Shown here one piece after another: positions 8,154-52,338 of a stretch of DNA of 64,000 nucleotides. The translations under genes were made by a program, and so were the position numbers. Under the pieces are notes generated by a model, which worked only from the letters and a program-made list of their open reading frames with translations, was not told the origin of the DNA and made no database searches. This DNA is from Octopus bimaculoides (Eukaryota). The stretch spans positions 24,488,557-24,552,556 of the forward strand of contig NC_068994.1 in NCBI RefSeq assembly GCF_001194135.2, in the 5' to 3' direction. Numbering within the stretch: the first letter of the stretch is position 1; each line of letters starts with the position of its first letter.

Positions 8154-8787
8154 ATGTCTCCTGCTAAAAGTAAAGGGCAAGGTCGGAAATCCAAAATGAA
8201 ACTGAAACAACATAGTCAGTATTACCCTCAGAATCAACTATATGTTGATTCTCATGTCTATAAAAGAACTTCTAAAAAACAAAAATCATCTGAATTTCAT
8301 GATGAATGTATGGACCCTGCAACCTTAGAAGCTCATGTTGAAGCAGCCACAGCTGCTGCATCAGCTGCAGTTGCAGCAGAAATGGCTAATTCTAATCATT
8401 CAAATTTAAAGTCAAATGTGTATTCATCTTCAAAAACAGATACATCACCATCAAGATTACTTACATCTGAAGTTCCAATATTGCCTGATGACTATCAAAT
8501 GCAATCTTCTCCTAAAGGTGTAGATATTGGGCAAGTGAAGCAAGAGGACTTACAGTTGTTTCTTGAGTCTATTCCAGACTTTCATCATGCTAATATTGTC
8601 AGAGGTGGTCGTTGTGTTAAATCAGGTTTTGTTCATGTTGTCAAAGGTGAAAATTACTTAAGAGATATATTTTATAACACAGCAACAACTCCACAACGAA
8701 ACATAATTGTTGTAAGAGAAACTCTTTATTGTAGTGGGCGTGGAAACTGTTTGCGTGCCTGTGGAGGTAGAGGACATTGTGTAGAAG
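8154..8787 (+). CDS. Coding exon 1 of an uncharacterised Cys/His-domain + coiled-coil protein (aa 1-211)
   Basis: 634-nt open frame with non-repetitive composition, a basic N-terminus, an Ala tract and CSGRGNCLRACGGRGHCVE. Ends at strong donor GAAG|GTAAGT (phase 1). Confidence 0.88.
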
Positions 8788-9333
8788 GTAAGTTATATTT
8801 CATTGTTAAGCAATAAATGTTGTATCTAATTGCTTCAGTTTACCCTGTTCAATCTCTACCAAATTTGTTAAACCATTAAATATAGAAGCATCTCTTACTC
8901 CATTGTTAATTATAGCAAACAGTTACCATTAAATTGTATTTTCATAGCTATGTTGATGACATAGTTGTATTTGCCATACAGTAATGTTGTAAACTTGATA
9001 AAACTATATAACTTACTCTTTTTGCTTTATATAATAAATTGTGTTTTTTTAATTAAAAAACATACAATTTTTAATTATATAATCAGTTTATAATCAAATG
9101 TTATTGAATGACTTGATTAATATTCAAAAGGACCTTGAAACAATTGTAATTCATGTTTACTGCATTTCAGGAAGCAGATCATAATTTTGTTAAAAAACAA
9201 GGTTTAATTGTAACAAAATAAGTATCAAGGGAATTAATTTCAGCTTGTTTGAGATAAGATGGTAATCAGTGCAATAAACCAACAAATTACCTATCCATTT
9301 TCTGTTAAATTAGTTCTGATCTCTGCTCCCCAC

Positions 9334-9401
<68 letters not shown>

Positions 9402-9584
9402 NNNNNNNNNNNNNNNNNNNNNNNNNNNNNNNNNNNNNNNNNNNNNNNNNNNNNNNNNNNNNNNNNNNNNNNNNNNNNNNNNNNNNNNNNNNNNNNNNNN
9501 NNNNNNNNNNNNNNNNNNNNNNNNNNNNNNNNNNNNNNNNNNNNNNNNNNNNNNNNNNNNNNNNNNNNNNNNNNNNNNNNNNNN
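9334..9584. repeat. (CT)n-(TA)n microsatellite running into assembly gap (N 9402-9584)
   Basis: Direct reading. Confidence 0.95.
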
Positions 9585-9910
9585 TACAGCTGGATGCCCT
9601 TCCTAACGCCAACCACTCAGAGAGTGTAGTGGGTGCTTTTACGTGTCACCCGCACGAAAACAGCCACGCTCGAAATGGTGTCTTTTATGTGCCACCCGCA
9701 CAAGCCAGTCCAGGGGCACTGGCAACGATCTCGCTCGAAAATCCTACGGGAGCCAGTCAGGCGGTACTGGCAACGGCCACGCTCAAAATGGTGCATCTCA
9801 TGTGCCACCCGCACAAGAACCAGTCCAGGGGCACTGGCAACGATCTTACTTGGCTTGCCGGGTCTTCTCACGCACAGCACATTACCAAAGGTCTCGGTCA
9901 GTAGTCATCG
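9585..9910 (-). mobile_element. RTE-X-like LINE 3'UTR fragment
   Basis: Same sequence and orientation as 2236-2650 (GAGAGTGTAGTGGGTGC..., tandem repeats, CTTGGCTTGCCGGGTC). Confidence 0.8.
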
Positions 9911-12872
9911 CCTATATTTATATATATATATAAATGAAGTAGTGCAGACTTTGTGTCTTGCTGAGAGTGTAGTCTAGTTTCAGAAATGAAATACAAATTC
10001 ATAACACTTCAGTCTTACACATTATCGCATGAAAACTATGATAATATACTTAAGTATATGCTTAAGTAATTCATGTCTTGAATCTATGTTTACAAAATGC
10101 ATCTCTGCTTCAGAATACAAGTTTGGTTAAATGTAAACTACTGGAATGGGGTTAGCTGATAGTTATATTTTGTATCTTGTATTTAAATCAAAATCTAAAA
10201 AGTTAGTTAAAAGCTTTTGGTGGGAATAATACAGATCAAGGTTTAATAATGACTAGAAAATCTGTTGCTGACTTTCCCTGTTAGTTTAAATATGAAAGTT
10301 ATCATTATCATTGATATCCTAATATGTGCTTTCATGTTCATTTTGTTTGCATAGATCTGCAGTACAGCATATCACTTACTAATACAGACTTTTGTTACCT
10401 GCTCTCTGAAGTCCAGCATCTTAGGATCTGACCACACCTCTTTCCCTGTTTTACTCAGTCATCCTATTCTTCAAATATGCTCCATCCACAGCACTTTTTG
10501 ACTCAGTATTTATTACCAATTCACCTCACATGTCCATACAACCACAATCATCTTTCCCCATGTTGATGTATTTAATATCTAATTGTTCTCTCAAATACTT
10601 GTGCTCTGCCTTTCAGGCAAGATGACATTGCATTTTGTTGTGAGCAAAGTCACTTTCCAGGTGACAGTGGGTTTTTCTGTTCTCAGTTACTAATAAGTAC
10701 TTTGATATTTGCTTTGCTAACTTTTAGCTCTTTAGCATTCAAATTACTCTACCAAATGTAAAGCTTATTTACTCATATTGCTTTGAATTGAGCATAGCTT
10801 TGAGATTTCAATGGTGTTATCTATTTTTAGGGTGACATTGTAGGGTAGGTGTGAGAGACTAGACTTGGCCAGTTTGAACTTAAAACAAGGGGTATATTTG
10901 GGCCAGATATGGCCAGTTTAAATGCTAAAGGGTTAAGTTTAACTAGTCATGACCAAGGTTACTGAGCTAGGTTCCTGAATGTTCATCTAGATCAAATTTA
11001 TGTTAAAGGGTTACTTTGTTGACAAAAGCAAAATGTTAAAAATTTCTATTATTTAGAAAAAAAAGTTAAATTATTTAACCCCTTGCACATAAAATTCTAG
11101 GATCTGTAATATCTCATCTAAATAATGCAAATATGCTACACAAATATTATATGACCTCCTATAAGGAAAGAGGTAAACAAATAGATCTAAATAAATAACT
11201 GAAAATATAATTTATTAGTGATAGCCTTTACAAATTACTTAGCTGATTTCACTACATTAGACTCCCTACAATTTGAAATTAACAAGATAAAAATGATTTG
11301 ATAATATGAATGTATTAGAAATTGTTTTTGAAATAACTCTGTTTGAGATTTCTTGAGATAAACTTGTTTTGAATGATATCAGAAAGTTTGATATAAAACT
11401 ATTTTGACCTCTTGTTTGGTAGGTATTTCCCTTAGTTTTAACAAAATATGCCTACATCTTATTTGAACATCGATATCTTTTTATCTTAAGTGTCCTTTAT
11501 CAGTTTAATTTGTATTGCAGTTGATGAATCATTATTTACAGGTTTCCAGTAGGACAGTCATTGATCCACTGCATTTCCAATGGCAACATAAACAAGGAAT
11601 GTTTAACTTGTAAAACAAATGTTACACGAGACTTTGCTCAGAGTCCAATTCATTTTATTTTGTTCTGTTGCTCATGTTTACTTCCTTTGCTGAGACAAAT
11701 TGACAAAAGATATCATCATCACCTGACATCAATATTCCATGCTTGTATGGGTTGGATGATTTGGCAGAATCCAACGGATCAGAGAACCATCTTTTGTCTT
11801 AGTTTTTAGTTGGTATCTTACTATGGAAATTTGCTTGTGAGCAAATTTTGTCTTTCTTTGCAAAGTATAAGTAACCTATCTTCAATTTAAAAAAATTCAA
11901 TTTCATCTCAAAAACTCTGTATGCGCAATTTTTCCACTCTGTACTAGTTGTAAAACGTGCATGCACACAAGCACATGGCTTAGAGGGAATATTGGTGATG
12001 AGGTGTGAGAATGTATCCTCAAGGTAGAAGATGATTAGAAGAGAGAATGGGGACCGAAAGACAGAGCAGGCAAAGATTGCAAAAGTGTTAGGGGAAAGTG
12101 GGAAATGGTTAGAAATAAGGGTGGAATAAATGTAGTGAATGGTGAACAAGGGCAATAAATGGTAAATATAAGTAAGGGTTGAGTGAGAAAACTGAAGGAT
12201 GTCAACAGAAGTGGTTCAGGGAAGTGGGGTGCTGGCTGGCAATACAGTAAGAGTAATAAGCTGCAGATTAATACAGTAGTTGGGGGAACGGTGAATGGAT
12301 GGGTGATGTGGAGATGAGGCTAAGTAAAAGTTGCAAGAATGTAAGGAAAAGTGAGAGACAAATAGAGATAGGTGTGACAATGGTCAGAGGTATATAAAGG
12401 CCCAAAGTGCCACACAGTGGGACTGAACCATGTCGTGGAGAAGGAAACTTCTTACCATACAGCCATGCCTGAAACAAACTTCAGTGTAGTTATACATAAT
12501 GTTTAATTTGTGGTATCAAAATAAGACTGTTCATGATGAACAAAAATGCATTCAGTAGTAAATGCTACATGAAATAAGCAAATGTAATATTCAAGAACAA
12601 AAATGTGTAATAAGTGAACAATCTGAAGTTTGGGTCAAGAATAGCATATCCATGTATCAACAGGATATATGGACACTCATGCATATAATAATGTATATAT
12701 AGACTTGCCTTACCACTTATATATGCATGCACATAAACAGATCAATATACTCATCAATATAACTGTACATGTATATGTAAAATCACATACAGACATACTC
12801 TGGTATGTGGTTTCACGGTCCTCTTTAAATTCTAAATCCAATGTAGGAAAGGTTCCAAGTATGGTGTAAAAT

Positions 12873-13206
12873 AAGAACACAAATGGGTTTCAGATACGTG
12901 TTTTGTTGATGAACAAATCAATAACATCATGAAATGAAAACTATTTTCTTCATATGAATAAAAATTTAAATCTAAAATTTAAGATTCAGCTCATAATGGA
13001 GAAATAATTTTTCTTTTTCTGATCATCACAAAAATTATACTTATTATGAGCCTAATCTTAAATGTTAAATTTCAGGTTTAAATTTCTATTCACCTTGAAG
13101 AAAATGTTTTTTTTTGTTTTTTTTCATGATGTAATTGATCTGTTCATCAATAAAAATAAAAACATGTCAGAAACAGTTGTAGTGAACTTCAACCCATTTC
13201 TGTTCT
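12873..13206. mobile_element. MITE-like element with degenerate inverted ends
   Basis: Left end AAGAACACAAATGGGTT...TGATGAACAAATCAATAACATCATGAAA is the inverse of the right end TTTCATGATGTAATTGATCTGTTCATCA...AACCCATTTCTGTTCT. Confidence 0.45.
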
Positions 13207-13741
13207 TTTATGTATATGTACATGTGTGTATGTGGGTACACATATTTGTGTTGTGTGTGTATATGTGTGTACACGTACACGTGTGTGTGTATGCATGAAA
13301 AGGTGATGATAGCTTTGTAACTTTCTGCTGCACTGAGGTTTGCATTCTTTTATCTCACTTAATGGACACAGTATCTTCCTGACTTTAATGACCTTAAGAA
13401 CACTAGCTTGGCTACAGCATGCCTGTGTTTCTTGTATGTCCACACAGTCAGTTTTGGATATAAAGTAATTAAGATAACTCTTTTGAAATTTGAGTAGTTT
13501 CATCTCTTTGCTTCTTGCATGCCTGTTATAGCCGCTCCTAATTTCCCTATAAATTCAAATATAATTTTTTAAAATACCACTTATCCAGAAATGTTGGTTC
13601 AATTTGTCAAGATATTATATTTGTACTTGTTTAACATTTTACCTGAAGATGGTAGATTATGTGCTATGATGTAGTCTATGAATAATCTATAAAATTCTAC
13701 CAAAACAGCTGTTGCAAATTTTAAACCCCATTTGTGTTCCT

Positions 13742-13742
13742 T

Positions 13743-13773
<31 letters not shown>

Positions 13774-13782
13774 GAATATATG

Positions 13783-13856
<74 letters not shown>

Positions 13857-13870
13857 CATATATACACACA
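13742..13870. repeat. (TA)n microsatellite
   Basis: Direct reading. Confidence 0.95.
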
Positions 13871-14024
13871 CACGTGTATATACACACACACACAAATATG
13901 TGTACCTACATACACACATGTACATATACATATAAGAACAGAAATGGGTTGAGGTTCACTACAACTGTTTCAGACATGTTTTTATTTTTATTGATGAACA
14001 AATATATATATTTACCACATGTAG

Positions 14025-14098
14025 TTTATTTTTCTCTTTGAAACCTATTTCTATTATATATATATATAATAGAAATAGGTTTCAAAGAGAAAAATAAA
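14025..14098. repeat. Perfect 74-bp palindrome
   Basis: TTTATTTTTCTCTTTGAAACCTATTTCTATTATATAT|ATATATAATAGAAATAGGTTTCAAAGAGAAAAATAAA, checked base by base; no spacer. Confidence 0.95.
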
Positions 14099-14099
14099 G

Positions 14100-14950
14100 T
14101 AAGAAGAAAAAGCGAAAATGCACATTGGATATTTAAAAAATAAAGGCTTTTTTATGAAAAGTAACGATAAATATATACAGTTAGATGAACTGAGGTAGAA
14201 TTAAGAGGAATAAAGTTATTATTTTGAATTGTTAAAGGAATTCAAAGTCATACCGATTTCATCAATTGCTGTTCACTGGCTTTCAATGCACACTGATTAC
14301 CAAATGGTGTTGTGTCTACTAGTCCCTGAATAAAAAGATTATATGTAAGGGAGGTAAGTAGTTCTGGGAGTGGTGCAATTAGGGTAGATGTAATAATGTA
14401 ATATGAATGGTGTATAGAATGTATGGGAATTAGTGGTATTAATGGTAGGGTTAGTAGTGTTCTATGTTATATGTTCACGTTGAGTTGTGGATGATATTTA
14501 TTGATGAAAGTTGCTTCTTTATTTCTTTGCTGAACTGAGGTATTCTGTGAACATTGATATAAAGGGAAAATTTGGAAGTTCCTAGCACACCTTTCTATGT
14601 GTTCACTGACCTGTAACTGTCTGTATTGTGGGTAGTGGATTTGTTCCTTGTGAAGAGTTGTTCTTTAATGGAGTGACATTCCTGTTTGGCCAATATAATG
14701 ATTATCGCACCCTAAGCAGGTAATGGCATAGATTAAGTTTTCCAAAGCACAGGTGAAATTTGATTTTATCTTAAATATTTCACTTTGTTTAAAGTGGAAC
14801 TCTGTACCCTCCAAAAGGTGGGGGCATGTACCACAATTAGGCTGACCACATTTTTTCACTTTCGGTTCCATTGTTAATGGATATAGTCTTGCATTGGTTA
14901 ATATTTTTTCAATGATTTCGGTTGCATTTTGCTCTTGATAATTTTGTGTG
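14100..14950 (-). mobile_element. Penelope-like element 3' part (GIY-YIG endonuclease)
   Basis: ORF 14665-14871(-) reads KCGQPNCGTCPHL...FTCALENLIYAITCLGCDNHYIGQTG, then RTTLHKEQI...VSEHI after a stop. This is the Zn-knuckle plus GIY-YIG arrangement typical of PLEs. Confidence 0.85.
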
Positions 14951-15469
14951 AGTCTAAAATTTTGTTCATGTATGTATGTATGTATGCATGCATGTATGTA
15001 TAAAATTAATTTACAAAGGTACCGTTAATTCTATTATTATCCAATGTCACTAGTTTAAGAATGATAATAACAGAATTAACGATACAGGCGGCTGCAGGCC
15101 AAAAAATGGCATTTAAATAGCCGAGGAATTATAATTAATCAAAGGACATACTAAGTATGTCTACCTGCTTGAAATAACAGTCAAAACTCGTTATTAAATC
15201 GTCAAAACTACACTGGTGATTACTACAGAAATCAAACGAAGGTAAATTTGGTTAAGACAATCTACTTACATACATTCAAGTATATGGATTTATGTGGACT
15301 AGTTTCTGCATTGGCACAAAATGCCTTAGCTTCTTCAGCACATATCACCACCAAAGCGATTTCCAACCTATCCTTCTGAAATCTGTGCCGCTACTGATTT
15401 GTTTCGCGCCGAAATCACAGCAGCTTCCCAGTGTAAAAAATAATCTCGTTGCCGATATATCTATATAAC

Positions 15470-15760
15470 TGATGACGAGGATTCCAGTTGATCTGATCAA
15501 TGGAACATCCTGCTCATGAAATTAACATGCAAGTGGCTGAGCACTCCACAGACACATGTTACCTCAACTTAGTTCTCAGGGAGATTCAGTGTGACATGGA
15601 ATGTGACAAGGTTGGCCCTTTAAGATACAGGTACTACTCAGTTTTGCCAGCTGAGTGAACTGGTGCAACATAAAATAAAGTGTCTTGTTCACAGACGTTA
15701 TGTGCTGCTGTGAACTAAACTCATGACCTTATGGTCATGAACAGAATATCCTAACCACTA
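15470..15760 (-). mobile_element. CORE-type SINE, decayed
   Basis: Contains GCCAGCTGAGTGAACTGG...AAAGTGTCTTG, resembling the reverse of a CORE domain; a related copy lies at 60170-60350. Confidence 0.5.
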
Positions 15761-17647
15761 AGTTATGCACCCTTACATCATTGAGCTTGGCCATTGGTCA
15801 GTTCATGAGAAATTTCCTAACAGTGTCTGTTCACAAGGCCAAGCTTATGGAGATGCCTATTAATGGTGCTTTGTGAGGATCAAGTTCTGCTAACAATGTA
15901 CAAGTGCCTCTGCTTGGCTGTTGTTTAACTTTTTCAAGCAAAGCTTCATCATCCACAACAGATGATCTGCCTGACCTTGGTTTGTCTGAACCAGTTTTGT
16001 GTCACACGTTTGTTGACAGTTCCTGAGCCTTCTACATCATTAATTTCTTTTGCCACTGCCCTTGTACTCAGTCCTTTTTCCACAGGTAGCGTAAAATGGC
16101 AATTTATTCAGCACAGAATAAATAATTCATGTTCATGTGTTAAACATAAAAATAAAGAATAAACAATTCAGCAATGGTAGGATAAGTTGTATCAAATTGA
16201 TGATGTAACATGAAGATGCAAGTTGCCAAAAATCATCAGAGAAAATCTGAAAAGATTTTTGCTCAACCTGGTATATATAAAGACATATACAGACAAGTAC
16301 TAATACATACATCTGCACATACATATATACACAAATTATACATTCAAAAAATATTGTTATATATCTCTATGCATTAACGTGTGTGTGTATAAATGTGTGA
16401 CAGTATGGCATACTAGTTTGAGTGTTCAGCTTATAATCAAAATATCATGGAGTCATTTCCTGTTTCCAACGCATTGTGTTCTTGAGCAAAATATTTTATT
16501 TCATGGTGTTCCAGTTTCCTCAGCTGAAAGTGTATACTAGTCAAATGCTGAAGCAGTTCTCTCTGTCTAACTATCCTGAATGTGCTGTTTGGTCAAAGAG
16601 TGGGAGAGGTAAAAGTTGTATTTTTATATGTACATATACAGGGTACCCTTAACAAATGTGTACACACATTGAATGATTATAAAGTCAGTGTTTATTAAAA
16701 TGCATTTTATCAAAAGGTAATAGAATCTACAAGAATAATTTTTTTCATTTTATGAATGCCTGTTTTTCAACTGATGACTGTTCTGGCCCAGATACTGCAG
16801 ATAATGCAGAGCAACAGAATAGCAAACATCAAGAAACATTTCCAGTGGACACAGAGTATTTTTACTGAACCCGTTTGGCAAATTATTATCAAGTTAAACC
16901 TTTACATTACTATGGTATGTAGCGAGGTCCCCATCTTACTGAAAATATAACTCCACATCTTAAAATCCTCTTGAGTGCTTGACATAACATATAGTTGCAG
17001 TAAATGGAGTAAATGGGACTAGTCACAGTATCATCAAAACAGATTGATCCAATTAATCCTTTTTTTTTTTTTTTCGTTTTTTAAGCCACACCAGTTTGGC
17101 AACAGACTAATAGAATAATTTCCAGACTTTAAAAATAAGTACTGGGGGTGATTTGTTTGACAAAACCATTTAGTGTCCCAGCATGGCCACTGTCTAATTC
17201 CTGAAACATGTAGAAGATGAAAGATAGAGATATATTTATATATGATGTTTAACAGTATTTTTCTATAATTCTGCTACTTATCAAGTACAGCATTTTTTTA
17301 TTGTCTCTCTGGAAATTTGCAGAGAAATATCCATTATGTTGATGAATTTTTTTTTTCTTCAGAAGGTGAATGATTCTGTACCTTGTTAAAAACATTCAGT
17401 AACTTCCTGCACAGCATAAAAAAAAAAAGTAATCTGTGTGATATTATTTCAGTTCATACTATTCATTATTAACATGAAATTAGAAGGCATGACGAAAAGT
17501 TTTTGAGTTTCGCTCAATGATACGGATGTAAAGTATTCTGAATGAACACTCCTATAGAATGGAGTTGAAACTATCAAAAGAATCAAAAACCATTTTCTTT
17601 GGGTGTGTAGTTTTATGGATCTTAGATTGTGATTAAGCAAATATCAT

Positions 17648-17960
17648 TGTCATCATCATCATCGTTTAACATCCGCCTTCCATGCTGGCATGGGTGGGAC
17701 AGTTTGACAAGAGCCAGCCAGGCAGAAACCTGCACTAGACTTCTGTAATTGTTTTGGCGGGATTTTTACAACTGGCTGCCCTTCCTAACACCAACCACTC
17801 ATCAGAGTGGACTTACTGCTTTTTACATAGCACAAGCACTAGCAAGGTCAGTTTTGACAAGGTTTTTGCAGTTGGATGTCCTTCCAAACACCAACCACTT
17901 TACAGTGTGGACTGCATGCTTTTAAGTGGCACCTACACTGACAGGATCACCAAGTACTTG
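17648..17960 (-). mobile_element. RTE-X-like LINE 3' end with (GAT)n tail
   Basis: Plus strand reads CATCATCATCGTTTAAC...CCATGCTGGCATGG...GCCCTTCCTAACACCAACCACTC, matching the other copies. Confidence 0.75.
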
Positions 17961-39699: not shown

Positions 39700-39719
39700 T
39701 GTGTGTGTGTGTGTGTGTG

Positions 39720-42700: not shown

Positions 42701-44700
42701 GGAAGGACTTTGCATTCATGAGATTCTGTCTATCTCTTTTTCTGCTGAGAATGTAGTCAATCTGGCTTATATGCCCACCAGATGGATAAGTGTTCTGGTA
42801 GCTAGTTGGTTTCCTGATGTTAGTGTTACAGATCACCATTTGCATCACAGGACTCCAACAGCCTTATTCCCTTTTCATTTCTAGAACCAAGGTTACACAG
42901 TTACACACATTTTAGAAGAGAGAGTTGGGGGGATCAGAGTAGAACTGGAAAGAGATAAAGTAGTGGTGATACGATGTCTGTATGGACCCTCAAGGTTCAA
43001 AGGGAGTAGAAGTGAATGAGGGAAGAAAGACAGGAGTGTGAGTGGGTAGAGGTTGCAAGAGTGTATGGGAGAGTGAAACATGGGGGAAAGGGTGAATATA
43101 ATGAATGAAGTACAAGTATTGAGGGGTGATACGTAGTGGAGGTAAGGAAGAGGTGACAACTGTATGGATTGGATGGGTCTGAGAAGTGGATGTAGTGAAC
43201 GGTGGATAAGGGATGGAGGTTGTAGAGGGATGTGGATGTAGAGCAGCAAAATAATAATAATGATACAGTAGACAAGGAAAGGATAAGAGAGTATAGGGAA
43301 AGAGAGGTAGGCATAATGCATGGGCAATGCAAGAGACATAACGATGCAGAAGATAAGATGATTTGGTGGGTGAGGGTACTGTTCTCTCTGCAATTTAATA
43401 TCTGTGAAGAGGACAGTATTAAGGATGAAGGATGAATATCAAGTGAAATGATTCCAGGTTGTGAGAAAGATTAGTGGTATTAAGAAAAAGTTGTCATTAG
43501 AGAAATGATGGGTTGTGAGAATGTTTCGACAAGCAAATTGAATGAAGGTCCCAGCTGTGCATGTAAATATACTCACACAGCACTTCCAGATCTTAGTTTT
43601 GCCAAGTTGGGTGGGTTTTCGTGAGAATCACATATTGCTAGTAACCCCTGATTTCCTGTCATGTCCTCCATGAGATCCAAAGTCCTGAGAACAGCTTTTA
43701 CTACTTCAGACCATGTCTTCCTGGGTTTCTCTCTTCCACAAGCTCCATCTACATTAAGTGATCAGTACTTTATACAGCTATCCTCATCCATATGCATCAC
43801 ATGCCTGGAATTTCCTGTCTAGTTCCATTATAGATTTAACTATGACAAACAGATCAATCTTCTTTCTTGCATACTACATCTGATTCCCCTTAAGCCCACT
43901 TTTTTTTTATCAGCACATTTGTACTATGTCATTCATCATCATCATTTAATGACCATTGTCCATGCTGCACATCCAATGGAGCCTGCCCACTTAATTTCTT
44001 TCCAGTTTTATTAAGTTCTCAGCATTCAAGGCCCATATCTCACTACCATGCAGCATAACAGTTCTAATATAAGTGTCATACAATCTGTCCTTTACTCTGA
44101 AGTAAAAACCTTTGTTTCTAGCATTGATAGAAACTCCCTAAGCTTTCTCTTGTTCATTCTTATCCTAGCTAGGTAACCAAGACTATCAACTATTTCTGTA
44201 AGCCATCCAGGCATTTAAGACAATTTATTTTTATTTTAGTGTGCTGATAATGTATACTGCTCCAGTGCATCTATCACATATGAAGCTTACATCCTCTGTT
44301 AGTTTGCCTGTGGTTCCAATACACCTCTTGTGTGTCCATAGCTTACAATGGATACAGCACATCAAGTTTATACTAAATCTTATTCTGCATATCAAGCAAA
44401 GCTATTTCCTTGAAGATACCAGAGACCTGTCCTTTTTCCTACCTACCAGAACCTTTGTCTTTGCCAAGTTTACTGCAATGTACTTGATTCTAGGTTTAGC
44501 TTCCATGCATGAGATGTCTTCTGTAATTCTACTATGAATTCAACTATGTATGCAAGTACCCATGGACAGCTAGTCTTAAACTCTTCTGTGATGAATAGGA
44601 CTATGATGAATAGAAGAGGACTGAAGACTAAGCTTTGATGGGCTCCTGCCTTCACGCTAAGTTTGCCACTTCTAAGTGGATCCTGGTTTTATCCAAGTAG
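39720..44700 (-). mobile_element. Cluster of RTE-X-like LINE fragments (tails, RT, APE and pyrimidine-rich 5' region)
   Basis: Tail at 39720; WYGRV/WYGH fragments at 40440-40500 and 41000; RGHQSLVISP (ORF 41723-41947); APE SQIDYIL (ORF 42597-42848); second RT copy 43590-44700 (GAHQSLVFSPLLF). Confidence 0.75.
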
Positions 44701-44719
44701 TTCACATGGCCAATCCAAC

Positions 44720-46330
44720 CAAGCTGAACCTTTAGGATCTTGACTTTAATGCTTCATGTCCAAGACTGTCAGGTTGAAGATACAGTTCTGCTGCTGGATC
44801 TGCATAATTGATTGCAGAAAGCAATTTTGAAACTTGTTCAAGCTGTTTGATATGTCTGCAATACACTGTCCACATTCCACACACATACAGGAGTGATGGA
44901 AGCCCAACAGCATTGGTGGAGAGGTGAATATCTTTGTGCTGCAGAACTTCCCAACACTTGACTTGCTTTCTGTTAAGGGCGCCACCACTGGAGATGGTAC
45001 TCCCCAAGTATTTGAAGCTATTGCGTGTTATCAATGGTAATGCATGATTGTAGAAGGAAACTGTTAGGTGTAGGTTGAAGGAGGGCCTCTGTCTTACTGA
45101 GGCTGATTGTCAAACTGAACAATCTGGATGCAGTGGAAAACCTATTAACAGGTGCCCAGTCATCTGCAAAGAATTTGTCTTTGATGAGCTTCCAGAAGCT
45201 TTTTGTGTGTGTTGCAAGGCAAAGCATGTTGCCCATCCAGATAGTATTTGATGTAAATGCCCAGATTTGAGTCTTCAGCAGCATGTAGAACTTTGGTGGA
45301 AAAAGAGATTAAAGAGTACTGATGCAAGCACACATCCTTGTTCAACACCATTGGAGATGTCAAACTTCTTACCAGGTTCATCAACTGAGTGCATCTCTCC
45401 AGTCATGTTATCATGAAAGAGATATATGAAGTTGGTGAATTTTGGTGGGTAGCCAACTTCCCAAGAATGATCCACGGATCTTCTCTGTTGACCTTGTTGC
45501 ATGTCTTATCAGAGGGATAAAAACAAAACACAAGTTCATGTTCTGCTCTAAGCATTTCTTCTGCATTTGTCTGACACTGAAAATCATATCTATAGTGCTA
45601 CATTCAGGCTGAAATCTGCATTCCAACTCAGGAAGATACTTCTTTGGATGCTGTTAAAATAAGTCTATTAAGGATGGTGTGGGCCAGAATTTTGCTGATG
45701 ATGGAAAGTCAAGAGATGCCTCAGTTGTTCTCTCAGTTTGTTCATAAACCTTTGTTCTTATTTAGGGAAAGTATTGCTGCATGCCAAAGGTCATGTGGCA
45801 GTTCTTTTTCTTCCCAGATACTGACCTGGAATACTTCAAGGGGCTCCTAGCTGAAGGCTTTGTATAGCTCTTCAAGAATGCTATCCTTGCTGTGTGCTTT
45901 GCTACAGCTCATCTGCTTTATGGCTGACAAGGAAGACCTGTACATGAAAATATTATAGTGGGAAAAGCCTTGACACAGCCCCACTCTATCAGCCTCAAAG
46001 TCAAGATCCACTGGCATGATCATTATGAATAGTTGCCTCTTCAGCTTTGAAATGCTGGCTAGTAGATTGATACAATCCACTTCATTGACCACTTTTGGGA
46101 CTCTTGCTCCAGATTTCTTCTCTTGGTTAACTTCCATATCCTTTCCCATGGCTGGGTGTAGTTAAAAGGCAGTGAAAGTTTTAAGTCAGGTTTTTTTTTC
46201 TAGGTGAGCTATTGGTCAAGACTGATGGACTCCACCTACCTAAAGCAACTGGTTTTGAGGTGCCAAGGATCTACTTTTGCTTCTTCTCCCATTAGTAGGA
46301 ACCACATGAAGGCTGGGAGCTGGACTCGGT
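44720..46330 (-). mobile_element. RTE (BovB-like) LINE fragment
   Basis: STIDMIFSVRQMQKKCLEQN, NGVEQGCVLASVLFNLFF, FFADD, LTISLSKTE and FKYLGSTIS across ORFs 44732-45626. Confidence 0.82.
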
Positions 46331-46847
46331 TAATAAAGGCTGTTCGAGACACAAGCTACATGGAAGCACTTCAGAGGCAATGAAAGCCTATCCCCATTAC
46401 AACTTTCAGTTATGCCAACTTTGAAATTCACATGCATGCATACATGTGTATATATGTCCACACATACGATTGAAAATCCTTTATCTGAACTTCCAGAATC
46501 TGGATAATTTTTGAAAACTGACATAACATGCCACAAGTGGAAATTCCACCAATTGCTGAGAAAGTTCCACAAAGTACAGATGTGTGCCATTAAAACACAG
46601 GAGTTCATAAGCAGCAACTATCATGTTTCGCTTTGTTTATTTGGTTTTTAATAGTAGAAGACACTTTTCCGAGGTTCTACACAATGGGACTAAGCCCGAA
46701 ATATATACATATACACATAAGGTATATACATGCATAATGTGTAAGTTTGTGTGTGTACACATATATTTATATGCATGTATGTATGTATAAGTGCTTACAC
46801 ACACCCATATGTATATATGTATCATACATATATATATATATATATAT

Positions 46848-46990
46848 ATCATCATTGTCGTTTAATGTCCACTTTCCATGCTGGCATGGGTTGGACAGTT
46901 TGACTGAGGGCTGGCGAGCCAGAAGGCTGCGCCAGGCTCCAGTCTGATCTGACAAAGTTTCTACAGCTAGATGCCCTTCCTAACACCAAT
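46848..46990 (-). mobile_element. RTE-X-like LINE 3' tail
   Basis: ATCATCATTGTCGTTTAATGTCC...CCATGCTGGCATGGGTTGGACAG...GATGCCCTTCCTAACACCAA. Confidence 0.75.
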
Positions 46991-47015
46991 TTATATATAT
47001 ATATATACATACATA

Positions 47016-47401
47016 GGTGCAGGAGTGGCTGTGTGGTAAGTAGCTTGCTTAGCAACCACATGGTTCCGGATTCAATCCCACTGCATGGCACCTTGGGCAA
47101 GTGTCTTCTACTATAGCCTCGGGCCGACCAAAGCCTTGTGAGTGGATTTGGTAGACGGAAAACTGAAAGAAGCCCGTCGTATGTATGTATATATATGTTT
47201 GTGTGTCTGTGTTTGTCCCCCAACATCGTTTGACAGCCGATGGTGGTGTGTTTATGTCCCCGTAACTTAGCGGTTCGGCAAAAGAGACCGATAGAATAAG
47301 TACTAGGCTTCCGAAGAATAAGTCCTGGGGTCGATTTGCTCGACTAAAAGAGGCGGTGCTCCAGCATGGCCGCAGTCAAATGACTGAAATAAGTAAAAGA
47401 G
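47016..47401 (+). mobile_element. tRNA-derived SINE family A, full length, young
   Basis: GGTGCAGGAGTGGCTGTGTGG (A-box), GGATTCAATCCC (B-box-like), many CpGs retained, GTAAAAGAG tail. Confidence 0.9.
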
Positions 47402-47699
47402 TATACACACATATGTATGTATGTATACCCTTTTAACATTAACTGTTGGAGAAAAAAGAGTACTCAGTACCATGGTAGAGATTTATAATATATCTTATTT
47501 TGATCAAGTGAGTCTCTTACTACTCTGTTATCAGCTGTAGGTGCAGAGGGTCTTCCTGTGCACCTACAGCTAAAGCACAGAGTAGCAAGAGATTGACTTA
47601 ACCAAAATGAATGGATAAAGTGCATACTTAATTGTAAACCATACAGCTCATTTAATGGTGTTTCTACAAAGCACAAAATATTGGCAACAAAGATATGTC

Positions 47700-48790
47700 T
47701 AAGCCTCCAAGCAACTAAGAAAATAACAGCCTCAGTCCATCTATTTGCCTGTCATACAAGATAAAGAAATTTGCAAAAATTTCATCATCATCTTGAAAAA
47801 TCCTTTTGATGTTTTCCAGCTTGAGAGAGAAGACTTATAGCCAAATACCTTGAATGCAAACTTTATCAAAATACATCATGAATATGCCAAAGTATGCCTT
47901 CCATGAAAGACTAGATTTAAAAGAAATCTGCCTTAGGAAAAAAAGAAACCATAATAGGTAAGAAGAAATACCTCAAGCAGCTCTATGAGATCAAAAACAG
48001 AAACCCAACTGCAGCAAATACAGAAAAAAAACAAATAAACGCAGAAGGAACTCGCAGAAAAAACATCAAAAGTATATTCAGCACCAAGTTGACTCTATTG
48101 AGCAAGCAGCAGAGAACATGCAAATATCCCTAGCTTAGAAAGAAGACTTCTAGAGCAATGGTAAAATCATCTAGCCAGCATAACCGTCTAAAAAAGTAGA
48201 AAAAACCCTTCCAAAATCAGCTTGGCAAGGTCTGTTATTGATGACACTACAACCAAGCTGATTGTTACCAAGAACTCAGTATCAAGACTGAGACATTTGC
48301 AATAGATGAACTCCTGGCTCTGCCAAAGAAATTACAGAATAATAAATCTATAGGTCTTGACTCACTTGTATCATACTTGTTTATAATATATCTGGATTAT
48401 TATATCTTATATGTATGCTTTGATATCAACAAGGGTTATGAATTTACACCTGAGACAGCTAGAAGTAGAAGTTATCTTGCAGTTGAATTATTGGATGTCA
48501 ACTTTGCTGATGATCTTACTCTTTTTACAGAATTAGCAGAGAAAATATTACATGCTCTTGAGACAGCAGCTGCACATAGAGGACTATGTCTCGATGCTGG
48601 TAAGACAGAAGACTTGGACTTTAATATAATAGGTGATATCTACACTTTGAATGACACCAATCTGAAAATGGTTGATGACTACTTACCTGGGAAGTAACAT
48701 CGTTTCATGAGAAAAGGACATCCAGGGAAGGATTGCAAAAGTATGGAATGCCCTAGACAGACTCTGACTTATATGGAAGTTTATAAAATA
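47700..48790 (+). mobile_element. Decayed LINE RT fragment (RTE-like)
   Basis: ORF 48377-48697 reads LLDVNFADDLTLF...ETAAAHRGLCLDAGKTE. Confidence 0.6.
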
Positions 48791-48799
48791 TTTATTAGT

Positions 48800-51700
48800 A
48801 ACAGAAAGGTAATATTTATCCTCACTTAAACTATACTGTAGTAGTTACCATGAGAGAAACTCTCGTCTTGGTTTCTGGTGCAAAAATGCACTCTTGTCTT
48901 CTTCTTTCCATATGGAGAGCCAGGCTGGCAACCATATATTATTGATAATAAAACTAAAGCAAACATAAGGCAAGATGTTACAATGCTTCTACATAAAGTA
49001 TCTCTTACAGCAGTTAGAGATGGTGAGTTCAACCCAGTTATCCATGAAGCTCTTCCAGCAATGGGCAGTAGACTCTTACCTGCAAGTCTAAAGTAACAAT
49101 ATAAATTTTGTGATGAACTATCAACACAGGTTGAAAGTTGAACAATACTGTGGTCTTGCTGGTCATTTACGGAATGCTGCAAATGCTCAAGTAGGATACA
49201 CAGTTATCTTGCCTTCACCATTTCAAGGTTCTCCTAGGAATATGCATGAGTGCTATCAAGATACCATGGCTATTGTTTGCATATATGATCCTCCTGTTAT
49301 CTTCCTCACAATAACATGCAATCCTAATTGGCAAGAAATTAGAGAGAATTTACTTCCCGGCCAAACTTTATCAGATAGACCAGACTTGGTGGTCCATATA
49401 TTCAGTATAAAGCTGCATGAACTCTTGAATGACATCACTAAGAAACATTTATTTGGACAAGTCACTGCTTACTGCTTCACCATTGAATTTCAAAAGAAAG
49501 GCTTACCACATGCCCATCTATTGATCATTTTGCACCCTGATGATAAATTGGATGATCTTTAAAAAATTGATCAAATTGTCTGTGCCATGATCTCAGATCC
49601 TGTCACTGAACCTCTACTTCATGAAACAGTGAAAAGGTGCATGATCCATGGGCTCTGTGGTGATCTCAACCCTACTGCTCCCTGCATGGAAAATAACAAG
49701 AAATTAAAGAATTTCCAAAGGAGTATCAACAAGAGACACAGATAAACCCAAATGGTTACCCGTTGTACTGACGACGTCAGGGGGCATTAGTTCGAGTTTG
49801 CAACCATGCAATAGACAACCGATATATAGTACCCTACAATAAATATCTCTGCCATAAGTTCAGTGCTCACATTTGTGTTGAAATTTGCCTCTTTGTCTCC
49901 TCTGTGAAATATATTTACAAGGATATCTACAAGGGATATGACTCCATCAATCTTGACATCCATGAAGCAGTTTCAAACAATAAGATTGAGCATGATGAAG
50001 TACGCAACCATTTAAATGCTAGGTATGTGAGAGCTCCTGAAAATATGTGGCACCTGCTTGAGAATAAAATGCATGACAGATCTCATTCAGTTATTTGTCC
50101 GCCTGTCCATCTGTCACAAGAGCAACTTTTATGCTTTGAAGAGGTCAAGAGAAATAGGTACTTGAGAGAGCAATACAGAAGAACACACCACTAACAGCTT
50201 GGTATCTTCTGAATCAAACAGATGAAAATGCCTGGAACTTGCATTATTCGGATATTCTGTACAGTTATGTCTGCAATAAGCAGACTACTGTATGGAAACG
50301 CAGACAAAGAGGAGGTGATAAAGTCATCTCCAGATTGTACACTGTTAGCCCAAAGCATGAGGAGCGATTTTACTTGAGACTGTTGTTGCTATATGTTCCT
50401 GGAGGTCAAAGTTATGAGGATGTGAAAACAGTAGACGGTATAGTCTGCAACTAATTTAAAGAAGCTGCTCTCAGAAGAAATTTAGTTCAAAANNNNNNNN
50501 NNNNNNNNNNNNNNNNNNNNNNNNNNNNNNNNNNNNNNNNNNNNNNNNNNNNNNNNNNNNNNNNNNNNNNNNNNNNNNNNNNNNNNNNNNNNNNNNTGAA
50601 GGAGTTAATATTGTGCGGTGCACTGCATCCTTCACAGAAGCTCAGCGCCAGGTCTGCAAACACATTACTGCAGCCATCAATGACAATGAACAACAGAGTA
50701 GATTCTTTTCCCTCGATGGCCCTGGAGGTACGGGAAGACCTACCTGTACAATACATTGATAGCTTCTCTGAGAAGGCAAAACAAGTGTATCCTTTCCTAT
50801 GCTACTAAAGGCATAGCTGCTGATTTGCTCATTGATGGAAGGACAGTTCACAGTGGACTCAAGCTACCTGTCCCATTGCATGATAGTTCCACCCCTCACA
50901 TGAGAATCCCTTCAGAGTCCTCTGAAAAATTAAAGCAGGCTCACCTTTTAATTGTTGATGAAGCATCAATGTTATCATGCCATGCTCTGAGAGCCATTGA
51001 TCTGCTGCTGAAGCAAATAATGAATTCACTCAGACCATTTGGTGGAAAAGTGTTGCTACTTGGTGGAGACTTCAGACAAACTGCACCTGTCATCCCACAA
51101 GGATTCAATGCAACAGTAACTGAGTCATCAATTAAGCAGTCTCGTCTCTGACATTTCGTAACAAAACTCAGTTTGACAGAAAATATGCGCATGGCTGGGC
51201 AAGATGACTTCAACAGGTGGCTCTTAGAAGTTGGAAATGGAACCCTCTCCAACAATGAAGGGCTGGAAGAAAACCTCATAGAAATACCTTAAAACACAGT
51301 ATGTACAAACAACATTGTTAGAGAAATTTTGGAGAAAGAATTATTACTAGACAATGATGAGGTAGTTGAATGAGTGACATCAACAATCATTTTGACACCT
51401 AAAAACAAAGATTGTTTTCATATAAACACTGACATAATGTCCTTATTGCCTGGAGAGACAATGATCTGCAGAAGCCTTGACACCATAGTTGAAGAAAATA
51501 ACAAAGCTGTTACACATTATCCAGTGGAGTTTTTAAATTCACTGATACTTTCTGGGATGCCACCTCATATACTGACCTTGAAGAGGCATTCGATAGTCAT
51601 GTTGCTAGAGAGCTTTACTCAATGGGACCTGGATCTTAGTGCTGTCCATCAAGGATTTTTTCATTCATGGAAAAATACTTAGTGGAAGTAAGAAAAGAGA

Positions 51701-52091
51701 GGAGACCTTCATTCTGCGCATCAACCTCTGTCCTAGTGAGACAACCTTTCTCTTTAGTATGAGTAGATGACAGTTTCCTGTTATCCCAGCATTTGTAATG
51801 ACTATAAACAAATCACAAGAGCAGAGCTTCAATTATGTTGGTATCATCCTACCATCACCAGTAGTCAGCCATGGACAACTTTATGTTGCATTGAGTAGAA
51901 GTAGAAGTTGTAATAATATTAAAATGTTGGTAAAGGACCGTCCAAAACAAGATGAACTCATTGCTGGTAGGGTTTTCACTAGAGACATGGTGTTGAAGCA
52001 GTTACTGAGGCAAAGGTTGTAATGTTTTTATTTTAATTTTATTTTTCGTATCATTTTCATGCTGTCATTTCTGATGGCACAGATACACTAG
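48800..52091 (+). mobile_element. Helitron RepHel remnant (5'-truncated), spans gap N 50493-50596
   Basis: Rep motifs FLTITCNPNW, EFQKKGLPHAH (HUH) and KYIYK.IYKG. Pif1 motifs DGPGGTGKT, IVDEASM, GGDFRQT and TINKSQ.QS...[11 protein letters not shown]. The 3' hairpin GCTGTCA-tttc-TGATGGC (52061-52078) is followed by CTAG 52088-91 and T. Confidence 0.93.
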
Positions 52092-52298
52092 TAAGTAATG
52101 GTTTCACTAGTAAGTAATGGTTAAAAGCAGGAAACCAAAACAAGGATAGTTAAATAATATCTTGTATGTATAGTAGCTTCAATTTTCTTAAAATAAAAAT
52201 GGTGATAAACTTTTAAAATAACAGCAAAGTTGTCTTTTTCTTCTTATACTTTTTTTAACTTACTGCATATTATAATATATATTTTCTTTTGCTTTCAG

Positions 52299-52338
52299 GA
52301 ATCGGGATAATGAATATGTGACTATCACACAACCTTGA
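52299..52338 (+). CDS. Coding exon 5 (terminal; aa 418-430 plus TGA)
   Basis: Strong acceptor ATTTTCTTTTGCTTTCAG|G. Phase 2 completes AA|G = Lys and reads NRDNEYVTITQP* (TGA 52336-38). Short, so less certain than the other exons. Confidence 0.62.

What the first reader, a model, noticed from the sequence alone, without database searches (positions are those of the whole stretch)
8154..52338. Unrecognised 5-exon gene encoding a WRKY/GCM1-fold-like zinc finger plus leucine zipper: candidate novel transcription factor
Seen: five exons with canonical splice sites whose phases (1,0,1,2) all join (about 1/81 by chance), giving 430 aa across 44 kb. Introns are 21.8, 2.1, 0.6 and 18.4 kb. The domain only becomes visible after splicing over the 21.8-kb intron: ...NIIVVRETLYC193-[Cys insert]-GHSC226FFQVKLSM...GTWRVKVQGSH250NGP. 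Established: WRKY/GCM1/FAR1/AFT/FLYWCH domains use strand-C...C-x22-23-H-x-H, with alternating hydrophobic strands and a conserved W before the last strand; many derive from Mutator-type transposase DNA-binding domains. Here C-x23-H and W-x-V-x-V are present, but the second His is missing (H-N-G), so H224 in H-S-C may be the fourth ligand. Inference: a sequence-specific DNA binder. The basic NLS-like stretches (KSKGQGRKSKMK, KRTSKKQK), the Ala tract and the zipper fit this; no transposase catalytic domain remains, which suggests a domesticated, intron-bearing gene.
Basis: partly seen in the sequence, partly recalled or inferred. Interest (0 to 1): 0.85.

Follow-up and report, generated by a model that had tools for sequence, protein, structure and literature searches.

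The report
Octopus gene with transposase-derived zinc domain
The five-exon gene is real but already annotated in Octopus bimaculoides as an uncharacterised protein; its conserved two-zinc domain belongs to an undescribed family found across invertebrate animals, and distant relatives of that domain sit at the front of Mutator-type transposases, which makes a DNA-binding role likely but untested.

Summary
All three assembly gaps are intronic. The O. sinensis orthologue aligns with no indel.

The cysteine/histidine domain (aa ~129-260, split by the 21.8-kb intron) defines a family of at least 167 clusters. Members occur in molluscs, brachiopods, echinoderms, hemichordates, amphioxus and some fungi. 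There is no Pfam model, no PDB relative by sequence, and no paper was found.

Eight invariant or near-invariant ligand candidates suggest two zinc sites. AlphaFold models are confident (pLDDT 86-88). Foldseek finds nothing significant, although WRKY domains repeatedly rank at the top. Profile comparisons with WRKY and GCM are negative.

The best new evidence is architectural. Distant family members carry this domain N-terminal to a MULE transposase core plus a SWIM-like motif. That is the classic position of WRKY-GCM1-type DNA-binding domains.

Other animal members are fused to the gephyrin G domain or to PUS3, which weakens a simple "transcription factor" reading.

Verdict: a domesticated, MULE-type zinc domain plus a short leucine zipper. 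DNA binding is probable and untested.

The parts
8154..8787 (+). Exon 1 (aa 1-211 plus 1 nt). Start ATG at 8154. Contains the basic stretches, the Ala tract and the first half of the zinc domain up to C209.
   Evidence: Identical to XP_014770149.1.
8166..8201 (+). Basic stretch KSKGQGRKSKMK (aa 5-16), NLS-like. A second stretch, KRTSKKQK (aa 37-44), lies at 8262-8285.
   Evidence: Residues 1-50 have pI 10.1 and net charge +9. Nuclear import is inferred, not tested.
8538..8787 (+). N-terminal part of the conserved domain (aa 129-211). It holds a helix, then the strand IVRGGRCV with invariant R153, D171, the strand IIVVRETLY ending in C193, then C199, C203 and C209.
   Evidence: HMM envelope. 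Invariant columns. AlphaFold secondary structure.
8788..30635 (+). Intron 1 (phase 1), about 21.8 kb. It contains assembly gaps 9402-9584 and 18469-18663 and transposon remnants. It splits the domain between C209 and C213.
   Evidence: About 70 of the 150 listed relatives match the profile only up to this point, which suggests an old, conserved exon boundary.
30636..30922 (+). Exon 2 (aa 212-307). The second half of the domain runs to 30781 and holds C213, H224-S-C226, the strand FQVKLSM, W242, the strand GTWRVKV and G248-S-H250. An acidic and polar linker follows.
33036..33252 (+). Exon 3 (aa 308-379). It ends with the short leucine zipper SELKKLRQENTSLKLEILQLRH at 33186-33252. The a/d positions are L360, L363, N367, L370, I374 and L377.
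   Evidence: 79% identical in other cephalopods. Weak, sub-threshold Pfam Cnn_1N hit.
33828..33942 (+). Exon 4 (aa 380-417). It has an alternative acceptor at 33831 (NAGNAG, isoform X2) and an alternative donor at 33937 (isoform X3).
33943..52298 (+). Intron 4 (phase 2), about 18.4 kb. It contains gap 50493-50596 inside a decayed Helitron.
52299..52338 (+). Exon 5 (aa 418-430, stop TGA at 52336-52338). In isoform X3 the same exon is read in another frame as ESG, with stop at 52308-52310.
   Evidence: The C-terminus is conserved in P0002.

Best explanation
LOC106869118 encodes a probably nuclear protein. Its core (aa ~129-260) is a beta-rich domain that likely binds two zinc ions.

**Proposed layout**
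- A basic strand carries invariant R153 and would be the counterpart of the DNA-contacting WRKYGQK strand.
- A second strand ends in C193.
- A 32-residue insert carries two CxxxC knuckles (C199/C203 and C209/C213) and would bind the second zinc. This parallels the zinc-ribbon insert of GCM.
- H224-x-C226 leads into the third strand.
- The fourth strand carries the conserved W242 and ends in G-x-H250.
- The usual second histidine is absent, so the core site would be C193, H224, C226 and H250.

A short C-terminal leucine zipper with Asn at an 'a' position would make the protein a dimer. Basic N-terminal stretches would serve as nuclear import signals.

**Shown:** the gene structure, the family and its conservation, the ligand pattern, confident predicted structure, and the link to MULE transposases.

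**Inferred:** zinc binding, the assignment of ligands to sites, the WRKY-like fold, DNA binding, dimerisation and a regulatory role.
For: - **Gene model.** It is identical to RefSeq and colinear with O. sinensis without an indel.
- **Family size.** 167 clusters have E<=1e-3 among 1.84 billion representatives. Members are named from molluscs, Lingula, echinoderms, hemichordates and amphioxus, and all are labelled 'uncharacterized'.
- **Conserved residues.** Across 36 members the invariant positions are R153, D171, G195, C199, R201, C203, G207, C209, C213, H224, C226, G248 and H250. Near-invariant positions are C193 and W242. That gives eight ligand candidates for two zinc sites.
- **Purifying selection.** Between two cephalopod transcripts, dN/dS is 0.05-0.07 in the domains and 0.15 elsewhere.
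- **Structure prediction.** AlphaFold gives pLDDT 86.5 and 87.5, with pTM 0.78, for two divergent members. The strands fall where a WRKY-type sheet would place them.
- **Fold search.** WRKY DNA-binding domains are Foldseek ranks 1, 2, 3 and 7 for model 1 and ranks 2, 6 and 17 for model 2. For 7p8k_B the rmsd is 4.3 A over 68 columns and TM 0.45 per target.
- **Transposase relatives.** P0148 has a MULE domain at 34.8 bits, above the Pfam cut-off of 27.6. P0126, P0138, P0135 and the chytrid protein P0144 carry the same domain at their N-terminus, followed by MULE / ZSWIM1-3 RNaseH-like matches. P0126, P0138 and P0144 also carry a C-terminal CxCx(n)CxH motif. P0148 is colinear with P0138 and P0126 at E 3e-47 and 3e-35.
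- **Precedent.** Babu et al. 2006 (PMC1702500) describe exactly this architecture for WRKY-GCM1 domains. They also describe an insert-containing family with a conserved W in strand 4, and a zinc-binding insert in GCM.
- **Charge.** The domain has pI 9.25 and net charge +7.
Against: - No statistically significant link to any WRKY-clan family was found. Pfam hmmscan of the protein and of 36 members gave nothing.
- Sequence and profile searches of the PDB gave nothing.
- hhalign gave probabilities of 0.2-0.5% against a WRKY alignment, the mouse GCM1 sequence and a 75-sequence GCM profile.
- All Foldseek E-values are 0.44 or worse. That is the same range as the unrelated hits in the viral library. 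GCM (1odh) was not among the 50 hits listed.
- The C-terminal HxH/HxC motif that defines the superfamily is absent.
- Many animal relatives are fused to enzymes: the gephyrin G domain in 14 of 67 long members, and PUS3 in gastropods and bivalves. That is unusual for a transcription factor.
- No expression, zinc or DNA-binding data exist.
Confidence: 0.6

Rival explanations
1. The domain is a general accessory module rather than a transcription-factor DNA-binding domain. It might bind RNA or tRNA, or it might target or anchor its partner protein. On this reading it was recruited repeatedly to enzymes, and the octopus protein is a free-standing adaptor or regulator.
For: - Conserved fusions exist. 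MoCF_biosynth (the gephyrin G domain) plus the domain occurs in echinoderms, hemichordates, Lingula, gastropods and bivalves.
- In Diadema the domain sits between the G and E domains of a gephyrin-like protein.
- The domain plus PseudoU_synth_1 (PUS3) occurs in Biomphalaria and Mya.
- The octopus domain is closer to the PUS3-linked form (40-45% identity) than to the gephyrin-linked form (about 30%).
Against: - The fusions come from automated gene models. They could reflect nested or neighbouring genes, and no junction-spanning reads were examined.
- The transposase-linked relatives argue for DNA as the ancestral ligand.
- The octopus protein has no enzyme domain, and no PUS3 or MogA exons lie within 11.6 kb downstream.
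Confidence: 0.25
2. The domain is a new two-zinc beta fold unrelated by descent to WRKY-GCM1. The resemblance (Cys after a strand, His after the last strand, W in that strand) would then be convergent or superficial.
For: - No significant structural or profile match exists.
- The model has seven strands and two or three helices, more than the four-stranded WRKY core.
- The HxH motif is missing.
Against: - WRKY chains recur at the top of two separate Foldseek searches, although they are a tiny fraction of the 350,542 PDB chains.
- The position of the domain in MULE transposases is the position of known WRKY-GCM1 domains.
- The local motif C-x-G-x3-C-x-R-x-C has the same spacing as mouse GCM1 C76/C82/C86.
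Confidence: 0.2
3. The model is a chance concatenation of ORFs, a pseudogene or a transposon fragment.
For: - The introns are full of transposon debris, and three assembly gaps fall inside the gene span.
- The last exon encodes only 13 residues.
Against: - It matches RefSeq isoforms exactly.
- It aligns with the O. sinensis orthologue with no gaps at 93% identity.
- Every exon, including exon 5, is conserved in other cephalopod transcripts.
- Purifying selection is strong in the cephalopod homologues P0002 and P0003 (the dN/dS was measured on those, not on the octopus gene).
- No transposase domain is present.
Confidence: 0.02

Closest known systems
N-terminal DNA-binding domain of MULE (Mutator-like) transposases and its domesticated derivatives (FAR1/FHY3, yeast Rcs1/Aft). 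This is the 'insert-containing' family of the WRKY-GCM1 superfamily (Babu et al. 2006, PMC1702500).
   Same: - Distant members of this family have the domain at the N-terminus of a MULE core with a SWIM-like C-terminal motif.
- There is a long insert between the two core cysteines.
- A W is conserved in the last strand.
- Host versions lack the transposase.
   Different: - No detectable profile similarity to Pfam FAR1, WRKY, FLYWCH or MULE-DBD models.
- The insert is a compact Cys4 unit (CxxxC-x5-CxxxC).
- The C-terminal HxH/HxC is reduced to one His, and an invariant HxC lies before strand 3.
GCM domain (glial cells missing; PDB 1ODH; Pfam PF03615)
   Same: - An animal, two-zinc, beta-sheet domain.
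- The second zinc is bound by a cysteine-rich insert between the core cysteines.
- The local motif C-x-G-x3-C-x-R-x-C has the same spacing as mouse GCM1 C76-C82-C86, and the ending G-x-H-[DN]-x-P is similar.
   Different: - hhalign probability is below 1% against a 75-sequence GCM profile.
- There is no Pfam GCM hit, and 1ODH is not among the 50 Foldseek hits listed.
- The insert is much shorter, and H154 has no counterpart.
Plant WRKY domain (PDB 1WJ2, 7Z0U, 7P8K, 9M0K)
   Same: - Best-ranked Foldseek matches.
- A basic, Gly-containing first strand (R-G-G-R against WRKYGQK).
- Cys at the end of strand 2 and His after strand 4.
   Different: - E-values are not significant.
- There is no WRKYGQK motif.
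- Extra strands and helices lie before strand 2, there is a 32-residue insert, and the domain has a single C-terminal His.
bZIP transcription factors
   Same: A short heptad leucine zipper with Asn at an 'a' position.
   Different: No basic region precedes the zipper (the preceding sequence is ...STCDGSCQ), and there is no Pfam bZIP hit. The zipper here would only dimerise a separate DNA-binding domain.

Membership tests
WRKY-GCM1 superfamily | Four-stranded antiparallel sheet. Zinc ligands lie at the end of strand 2, the start of strand 3 and after strand 4. | tested here: inconclusive
   AlphaFold secondary structure and the invariant C193, H224/C226 and H250 fall at those places. Coordinates and strand pairing could not be inspected.
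WRKY-GCM1 superfamily | C-terminal HxH or HxC ligand pair | tested here: not met
   Only H250 is conserved. The next positions are N-G, V-P or N-D in the family. Invariant H224 is proposed as the replacement.
WRKY-GCM1 superfamily | Significant structural similarity to a solved member | tested here: inconclusive
   WRKY chains rank 1-3 and 7 (model 1) and 2, 6 and 17 (model 2). E-values are 0.44-8 and TM per target is 0.33-0.46.
WRKY-GCM1 superfamily | Significant sequence or profile similarity to WRKY, GCM, FLYWCH, FAR1 or MULE-DBD families | tested here: not met
   Pfam hmmscan gave none at E<=10. hhalign probability was 0.2-0.5% against WRKY and GCM. A profile search of 5.8 billion proteins returned no Pfam-annotated relative.
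WRKY-GCM1 superfamily (MULE-associated) | Occurs N-terminal to a MULE transposase core, often with a C-terminal SWIM | tested here: met
   Met for distant family members, not for the octopus protein. P0148 is above the Pfam MULE cut-off. P0126, P0138, P0135 and P0144 are sub-threshold at the same position, and P0126, P0138 and P0144 also carry CxCx(n)CxH. P0148, P0138 and P0126 are mutually colinear.
GCM family (PF03615) | Match to the GCM profile over about 150 residues, with 7 Cys and 4 His | tested here: not met
   No Pfam hit. hhalign E 0.13-0.27 over 31-34 columns only.
bZIP | A basic DNA-contact region immediately N-terminal to the zipper | tested here: not met
   The sequence before the zipper is acidic and polar, and there is no Pfam bZIP hit.
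Zinc-binding domain (any) | Stoichiometric zinc held by Cys/His ligands | not testable with these tools
   Eight conserved candidates are seen. Metal analysis is needed.
Sequence-specific transcription factor | Binds a defined DNA motif and changes transcription | not testable with these tools
   Only indirect evidence: a basic domain, NLS-like stretches, a zipper and transposase ancestry.

The most novel reading that the evidence does not exclude
This is an undescribed, bilaterian-wide family of domesticated MULE-transposase DNA-binding domains with a new ligand arrangement: Cys after strand 2, a Cys4 knuckle insert, HxC before strand 3, and a single His after strand 4. It may be the closest relative of the animal GCM domain. 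It would be a genuine spliced module of the gephyrin and PUS3 genes in many invertebrates, tying a molybdenum-cofactor/synaptic scaffold gene and a tRNA-modifying enzyme to DNA or chromatin. Cephalopods would have released it as free-standing, zipper-dimerised factors, with at least three paralogues in octopus and a tandem-domain form in other cephalopods.
Probability: 0.25. Interest if true: 0.7.

Novelty: new variant of a known kind. Interest (0 to 1): 0.5.

Why it matters
If the reading holds, a whole family of zinc-binding, probably DNA-binding proteins in molluscs, brachiopods, echinoderms, hemichordates and amphioxus is missing from domain databases, and so from every transcription-factor census of these animals.

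It would be another clean case of a transposase DNA-binding domain turned into host genes. It might also clarify where the animal-specific GCM domain came from.

The recurrent pairing with the gephyrin G domain and with PUS3 is unexplained and can be tested directly with existing RNA-seq data.

For the octopus genome itself the result is modest. An 'uncharacterized protein' gains a domain definition, a likely metal-site map and a testable function.

Tried and rejected
- **Pfam on the full protein, four homologues and all 36 domain segments.** No relevant family was found.
- **PDB sequence and profile search.** No hits.
- **hhalign of the family against a WRKY alignment, mouse GCM1 and a 75-sequence GCM profile.** Probability was below 1%. 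The only overlap was the short CxGx3CxRxC or G-x-H segments.
- **Third large protein search with a widened 28-sequence profile, meant to bridge to FAR1/WRKY-annotated proteins.** It returned only unannotated, mostly Glomeromycota copies.
- **Foldseek against viral structures.** Noise only.
- **Search for PUS3 or MogA exons in the window.** None found, so the octopus gene is not visibly part of such a fusion within this window.
- **bZIP reading.** Rejected because there is no basic region.
- **Pseudogene or chance-ORF reading.** Rejected on conservation and the RefSeq identity.
- **Rfam and tRNA scans of the window.** Nothing found.
- **Literature searches for the locus names and for gephyrin+WRKY+transposase.** Nothing found.

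Full report
**Observation**

All are bordered by AG...GT, with good polypyrimidine tracts and GTAAG-type donors. They join in frame to a 430-aa product ending at a TGA.

An exact-sequence look-up shows that this product is XP_014770149.1 / XP_052828736.1, [quoted passage not shown] (UniProt A0A0L8HSG7). The 429-aa isoform X2 differs by use of the second AG of a tag|cag tandem acceptor at exon 4. The 419-aa isoform X3 uses a donor 5 nt upstream in exon 4, so exon 5 is read as ESG-stop. The gene is therefore real and annotated, but nothing is known about it. No paper in the library mentions the locus.

**Assembly gaps**

Gaps 9402-9584 and 18469-18663 are inside intron 1, and 50493-50596 is inside intron 4. 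None touches an exon or a splice site. Continuity and frame across the gaps do not matter for the protein. Only the intron lengths (21.8 and 18.4 kb) are estimates.

The O. sinensis orthologue comes from an independent assembly. It is also 430 aa and aligns with no gap (402/430 identical), so no coding exon is hidden in a gap. The first gap abuts a (TA)n microsatellite, and the third lies inside a Helitron remnant.

**Support for the splice junctions from other species**

Two ~600-aa homologues (P0002, P0003; 41% identity) are encoded as uninterrupted ORFs on 2.1-2.3-kb contigs assembled from six different sequencing runs, with flanking untranslated sequence. These read like mRNAs. They carry the sequence that spans the octopus exon 1/2 junction (…CGGRGxCxEGCPK…GGHxC…) without interruption, and they do so twice, because they contain two tandem copies of the domain. 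Exons 3, 4 and 5 are also recognisable in them.

Between these two transcripts dN/dS is 0.11 overall. It is 0.07 and 0.05 in the two domain copies and 0.15 elsewhere (dS is about 1, so the values are approximate).

**The domain family**

A profile of the domain was run against 1.84 billion representative proteins. It found 167 clusters at E<=1e-3 and 107 at E<=1e-10. The named members are all 'uncharacterized' or 'hypothetical'. They come from these groups:
- gastropods: Biomphalaria, Pomacea, Aplysia, Patella, Gigantopelta
- bivalves: Mya, Sinanodonta, Dreissena
- the brachiopod Lingula
- echinoderms: Patiria, Diadema, Amphiura
- hemichordates: Ptychodera, Saccoglossus
- amphioxus
- at least two further octopus paralogues (LOC106879828, LOC115226066)

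No vertebrate, arthropod or nematode name appeared among the thirty clusters looked up. I cannot claim absence from those groups.

About 70 of the 150 listed hits match the profile only up to position 84-86, which is the end of octopus exon 1. Their predicted proteins then run into unrelated sequence. I take this as a sign that the intron between C209 and C213 is old and widely shared.

In a 36-sequence alignment the invariant residues (octopus numbering) are R153, D171, G195, C199, R201, C203, G207, C209, C213, H224, C226, G248 and H250. C193, F173, G204 and W242 are above 90%. That gives eight Cys/His candidates, enough for two tetrahedral zinc sites.

**What fold is it?**

By sequence the family matches nothing known:
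- Pfam hmmscan of the protein, of homologues and of all 36 segments gives no relevant family even at E<=10.
- Sequence and profile searches of PDB chains give no hit.

AlphaFold2 with the family alignment gives confident models for the octopus domain (pLDDT 86.5, pTM 0.78) and for the divergent Ptychodera domain (87.5, 0.78). In the octopus model, numbered from aa 124, the elements are:
- a short strand
- two helices
- strand 25-32 (IVRGGRCV)
- two short strands
- strand 62-70 (IIVVRETLY, followed by C193)
- a 35-residue loop that holds the cysteine knuckles and H224-S-C226
- strand 106-112 (FQVKLSM)
- strand 118-124 (GTWRVKV, followed by G-S-H250)

This is the order expected for a WRKY-type sheet with a large insert between the two core cysteines.

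Foldseek against the PDB finds nothing significant (best E 0.44). However, WRKY DNA-binding domains are ranks 1, 2, 3 and 7 for the octopus model and ranks 2, 6 and 17 for the Ptychodera model. For 7p8k_B the fit is 4.3 A over 68 columns, with TM 0.45 per target. NAC domains appear at ranks 21-22 of the octopus-model search only. WRKY chains are a very small part of the 350,542 chains searched, so their recurrence is suggestive. Still, the scores are no better than the unrelated top hits in the viral library.

I checked my typed WRKY4 and mouse GCM1 sequences against PDB chains 1wj2_A and 1odh_A and found them exact. I then ran profile-profile comparisons. The family against a five-sequence WRKY alignment, against GCM1, and against a 75-sequence GCM profile built from a dedicated search all gave probabilities of 0.2-0.5%.

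GTWRVKVQGSHNG aligns with AVVTTYEGKHNH of WRKY. YCSGRGNCLRAC aligns with SCLGVVVCSRDC of GCM, which has the same C-x5-C-x3-C spacing as GCM1 C76/C82/C86. These are leads, not evidence.

**The transposase link**

I scanned 67 long family members against Pfam. This showed MoCF_biosynth in 14 and a MULE transposase domain in one.

- That one, P0148, scores 34.8 bits against a cut-off of 27.6.
- Four more distant members have sub-threshold matches to MULE and to the related ZSWIM1-3 RNaseH-like family at the equivalent place, 150-250 residues after the domain. They are P0126, P0138, P0135 and P0144 (from the chytrid Nowakowskiella). The three long ones, P0126, P0138 and P0144, end with a CxCx(n)CxH motif of the SWIM type.
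- P0148 is colinear with P0138 (E 3e-47) and P0126 (E 3e-35), from the cysteine-rich domain through the catalytic region.
- These proteins had been found with the first profile, which contained only animal host sequences, at E 4.5e-10 to 2e-6 against the whole library.
- A widened profile also finds many short, unannotated copies in Glomeromycota, the pattern expected of a mobile element.

An N-terminal zinc domain, a MULE core and a C-terminal SWIM is the architecture that Babu, Iyer, Balaji and Aravind (2006; PMC1702500) describe for WRKY-GCM1 domains of MULE transposases. [quoted passage not shown] That paper does not mention gephyrin, molybdenum-cofactor or pseudouridine-synthase fusions. 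A search for gephyrin+WRKY+transposase found no paper.

**Other architectures**

- In echinoderms, hemichordates, Lingula and several molluscs the domain follows an N-terminal MoCF_biosynth domain.
- In Diadema it lies between that G domain and the MoeA-type E domain of a 'gephyrin-like' protein.
- In Biomphalaria and Mya it precedes a PUS3-type pseudouridine synthase.

These are automated gene models, and I could not examine junction reads. The same pairings recur across phyla, so they reflect either real fusion proteins or very old nested or neighbouring arrangements. No PUS3 or MogA exon is detectable in this window.

**The rest of the octopus protein**

- Residues 1-50 are strongly basic (pI 10.1). 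They contain KSKGQGRKSKMK and KRTSKKQK.
- Residues 51-128 and 257-350 are acidic and polar, with an Ala tract.
- The domain itself has pI 9.25 and net charge +7.
- Residues 358-379 form a short heptad repeat with a/d residues L360, L363, N367, L370, I374 and L377. This stretch is 79% identical in the other cephalopods.
- No basic region precedes the repeat, so this is not a bZIP.

**Interpretation**

The most economical reading has four parts:
1. The domain is a divergent, two-zinc version of the MULE-transposase DNA-binding domain, which is of the WRKY-GCM1 type.
2. It was taken over by host genes before or early in bilaterian evolution.
3. It is kept under strong purifying selection.
4. In cephalopods it is combined with a dimerising zipper.

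I propose C193/H224/C226/H250 as the core zinc site and C199/C203/C209/C213 as the insert site. I propose the R-G-G-R strand with invariant R153 as the DNA-contacting strand. All three proposals are inferences.

I give about 0.6 to this package as a whole. Within it, the MULE relationship is well supported, the WRKY-type fold is moderately supported, and the transcription-factor role is weakest.

The main rivals are these:
- The module serves enzymes such as PUS3 and gephyrin in some non-transcriptional way.
- The fold is new and the WRKY resemblance is superficial.

**Novelty and score**

The gene is not new and the kind of thing is familiar: a domesticated transposase zinc finger. The family, its ligand arrangement and its fusion partners appear to be undescribed. 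I file it as a new variant of a known kind, with interest 0.5.

Noticed in passing
window 49110-52022 (+), intron 4: A decayed Helitron. It has the Helitron_like_N domain (E 7.5e-45), PIF1 helicase pieces (E 7e-32), a Pif1 2B domain and a helicase C-terminal piece, broken into several ORFs. The assembly gap 50493-50596 lies inside it. It ends about 280 bp before exon 5.
   Followed up: partly
window 5644-6174 (+) and 4602-5253 (-): Upstream of the gene lies another Pif1 2B-domain ORF (Helitron fragment) and a Tc1/mariner-type DDE_3 transposase remnant.
   Followed up: partly
window 3204-3809 (-), 37100-39032 (+), 45018-45626 (-): Reverse-transcriptase (RVT_1) fragments of LINE-like elements. 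One has a PHD-like finger, and one is followed by an ORF with C2H2 fingers.
   Followed up: partly
window 18782-20575 (+) and 26058-27198 (+), intron 1: Two sets of ORFs resemble each other (…EVEWLSKGNCVLRFVELF… / …EVHWLSKGKVLNRVHELH…) and look like hAT/ZBED-type transposase remnants. Pfam gave only a weak Spin-doc zinc-finger hit for one piece.
   Followed up: partly
window 33825-33830 and 33937-33944: A tandem NAGNAG acceptor (tag|cag) and two donors 5 nt apart at exon 4 explain the three RefSeq isoforms (430, 429 and 419 aa). The 419-aa form loses the conserved C-terminal tail.
   Followed up: yes
related proteins P0026, P0029, P0031, P0033, P0034, P0038, P0039: In echinoderms, hemichordates, Lingula and molluscs the same domain follows a gephyrin-type G domain (MoCF_biosynth). 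In Diadema it sits between the G and E domains. It is not known whether these are real isoforms of the gephyrin gene or nested genes.
   Followed up: partly
related proteins P0022, P0016: In Biomphalaria and Mya the domain forms the N-terminus of the PUS3 tRNA pseudouridine synthase. Several independent annotations agree.
   Followed up: partly
loci L001-L006 (P0002, P0003): Other cephalopods (species not identified, Logan assemblies of six runs) express a ~600-aa orthologue with two tandem copies of the domain, followed by the same zipper and tail.
   Followed up: partly
related proteins P0315-P0368: There are many short, unannotated copies of the domain in Glomeromycota (Rhizophagus, Gigaspora, Scutellospora, Paraglomus). 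Two Gigaspora margarita copies are labelled 'gephyrin: PROVISIONAL'. This looks like a transposon expansion.
   Followed up: no
window 9340-9401 and 13600-13900, 34800-36300: Long (TA)n and (TG/CA)n-type microsatellites. The first directly abuts the assembly gap at 9402.
   Followed up: no
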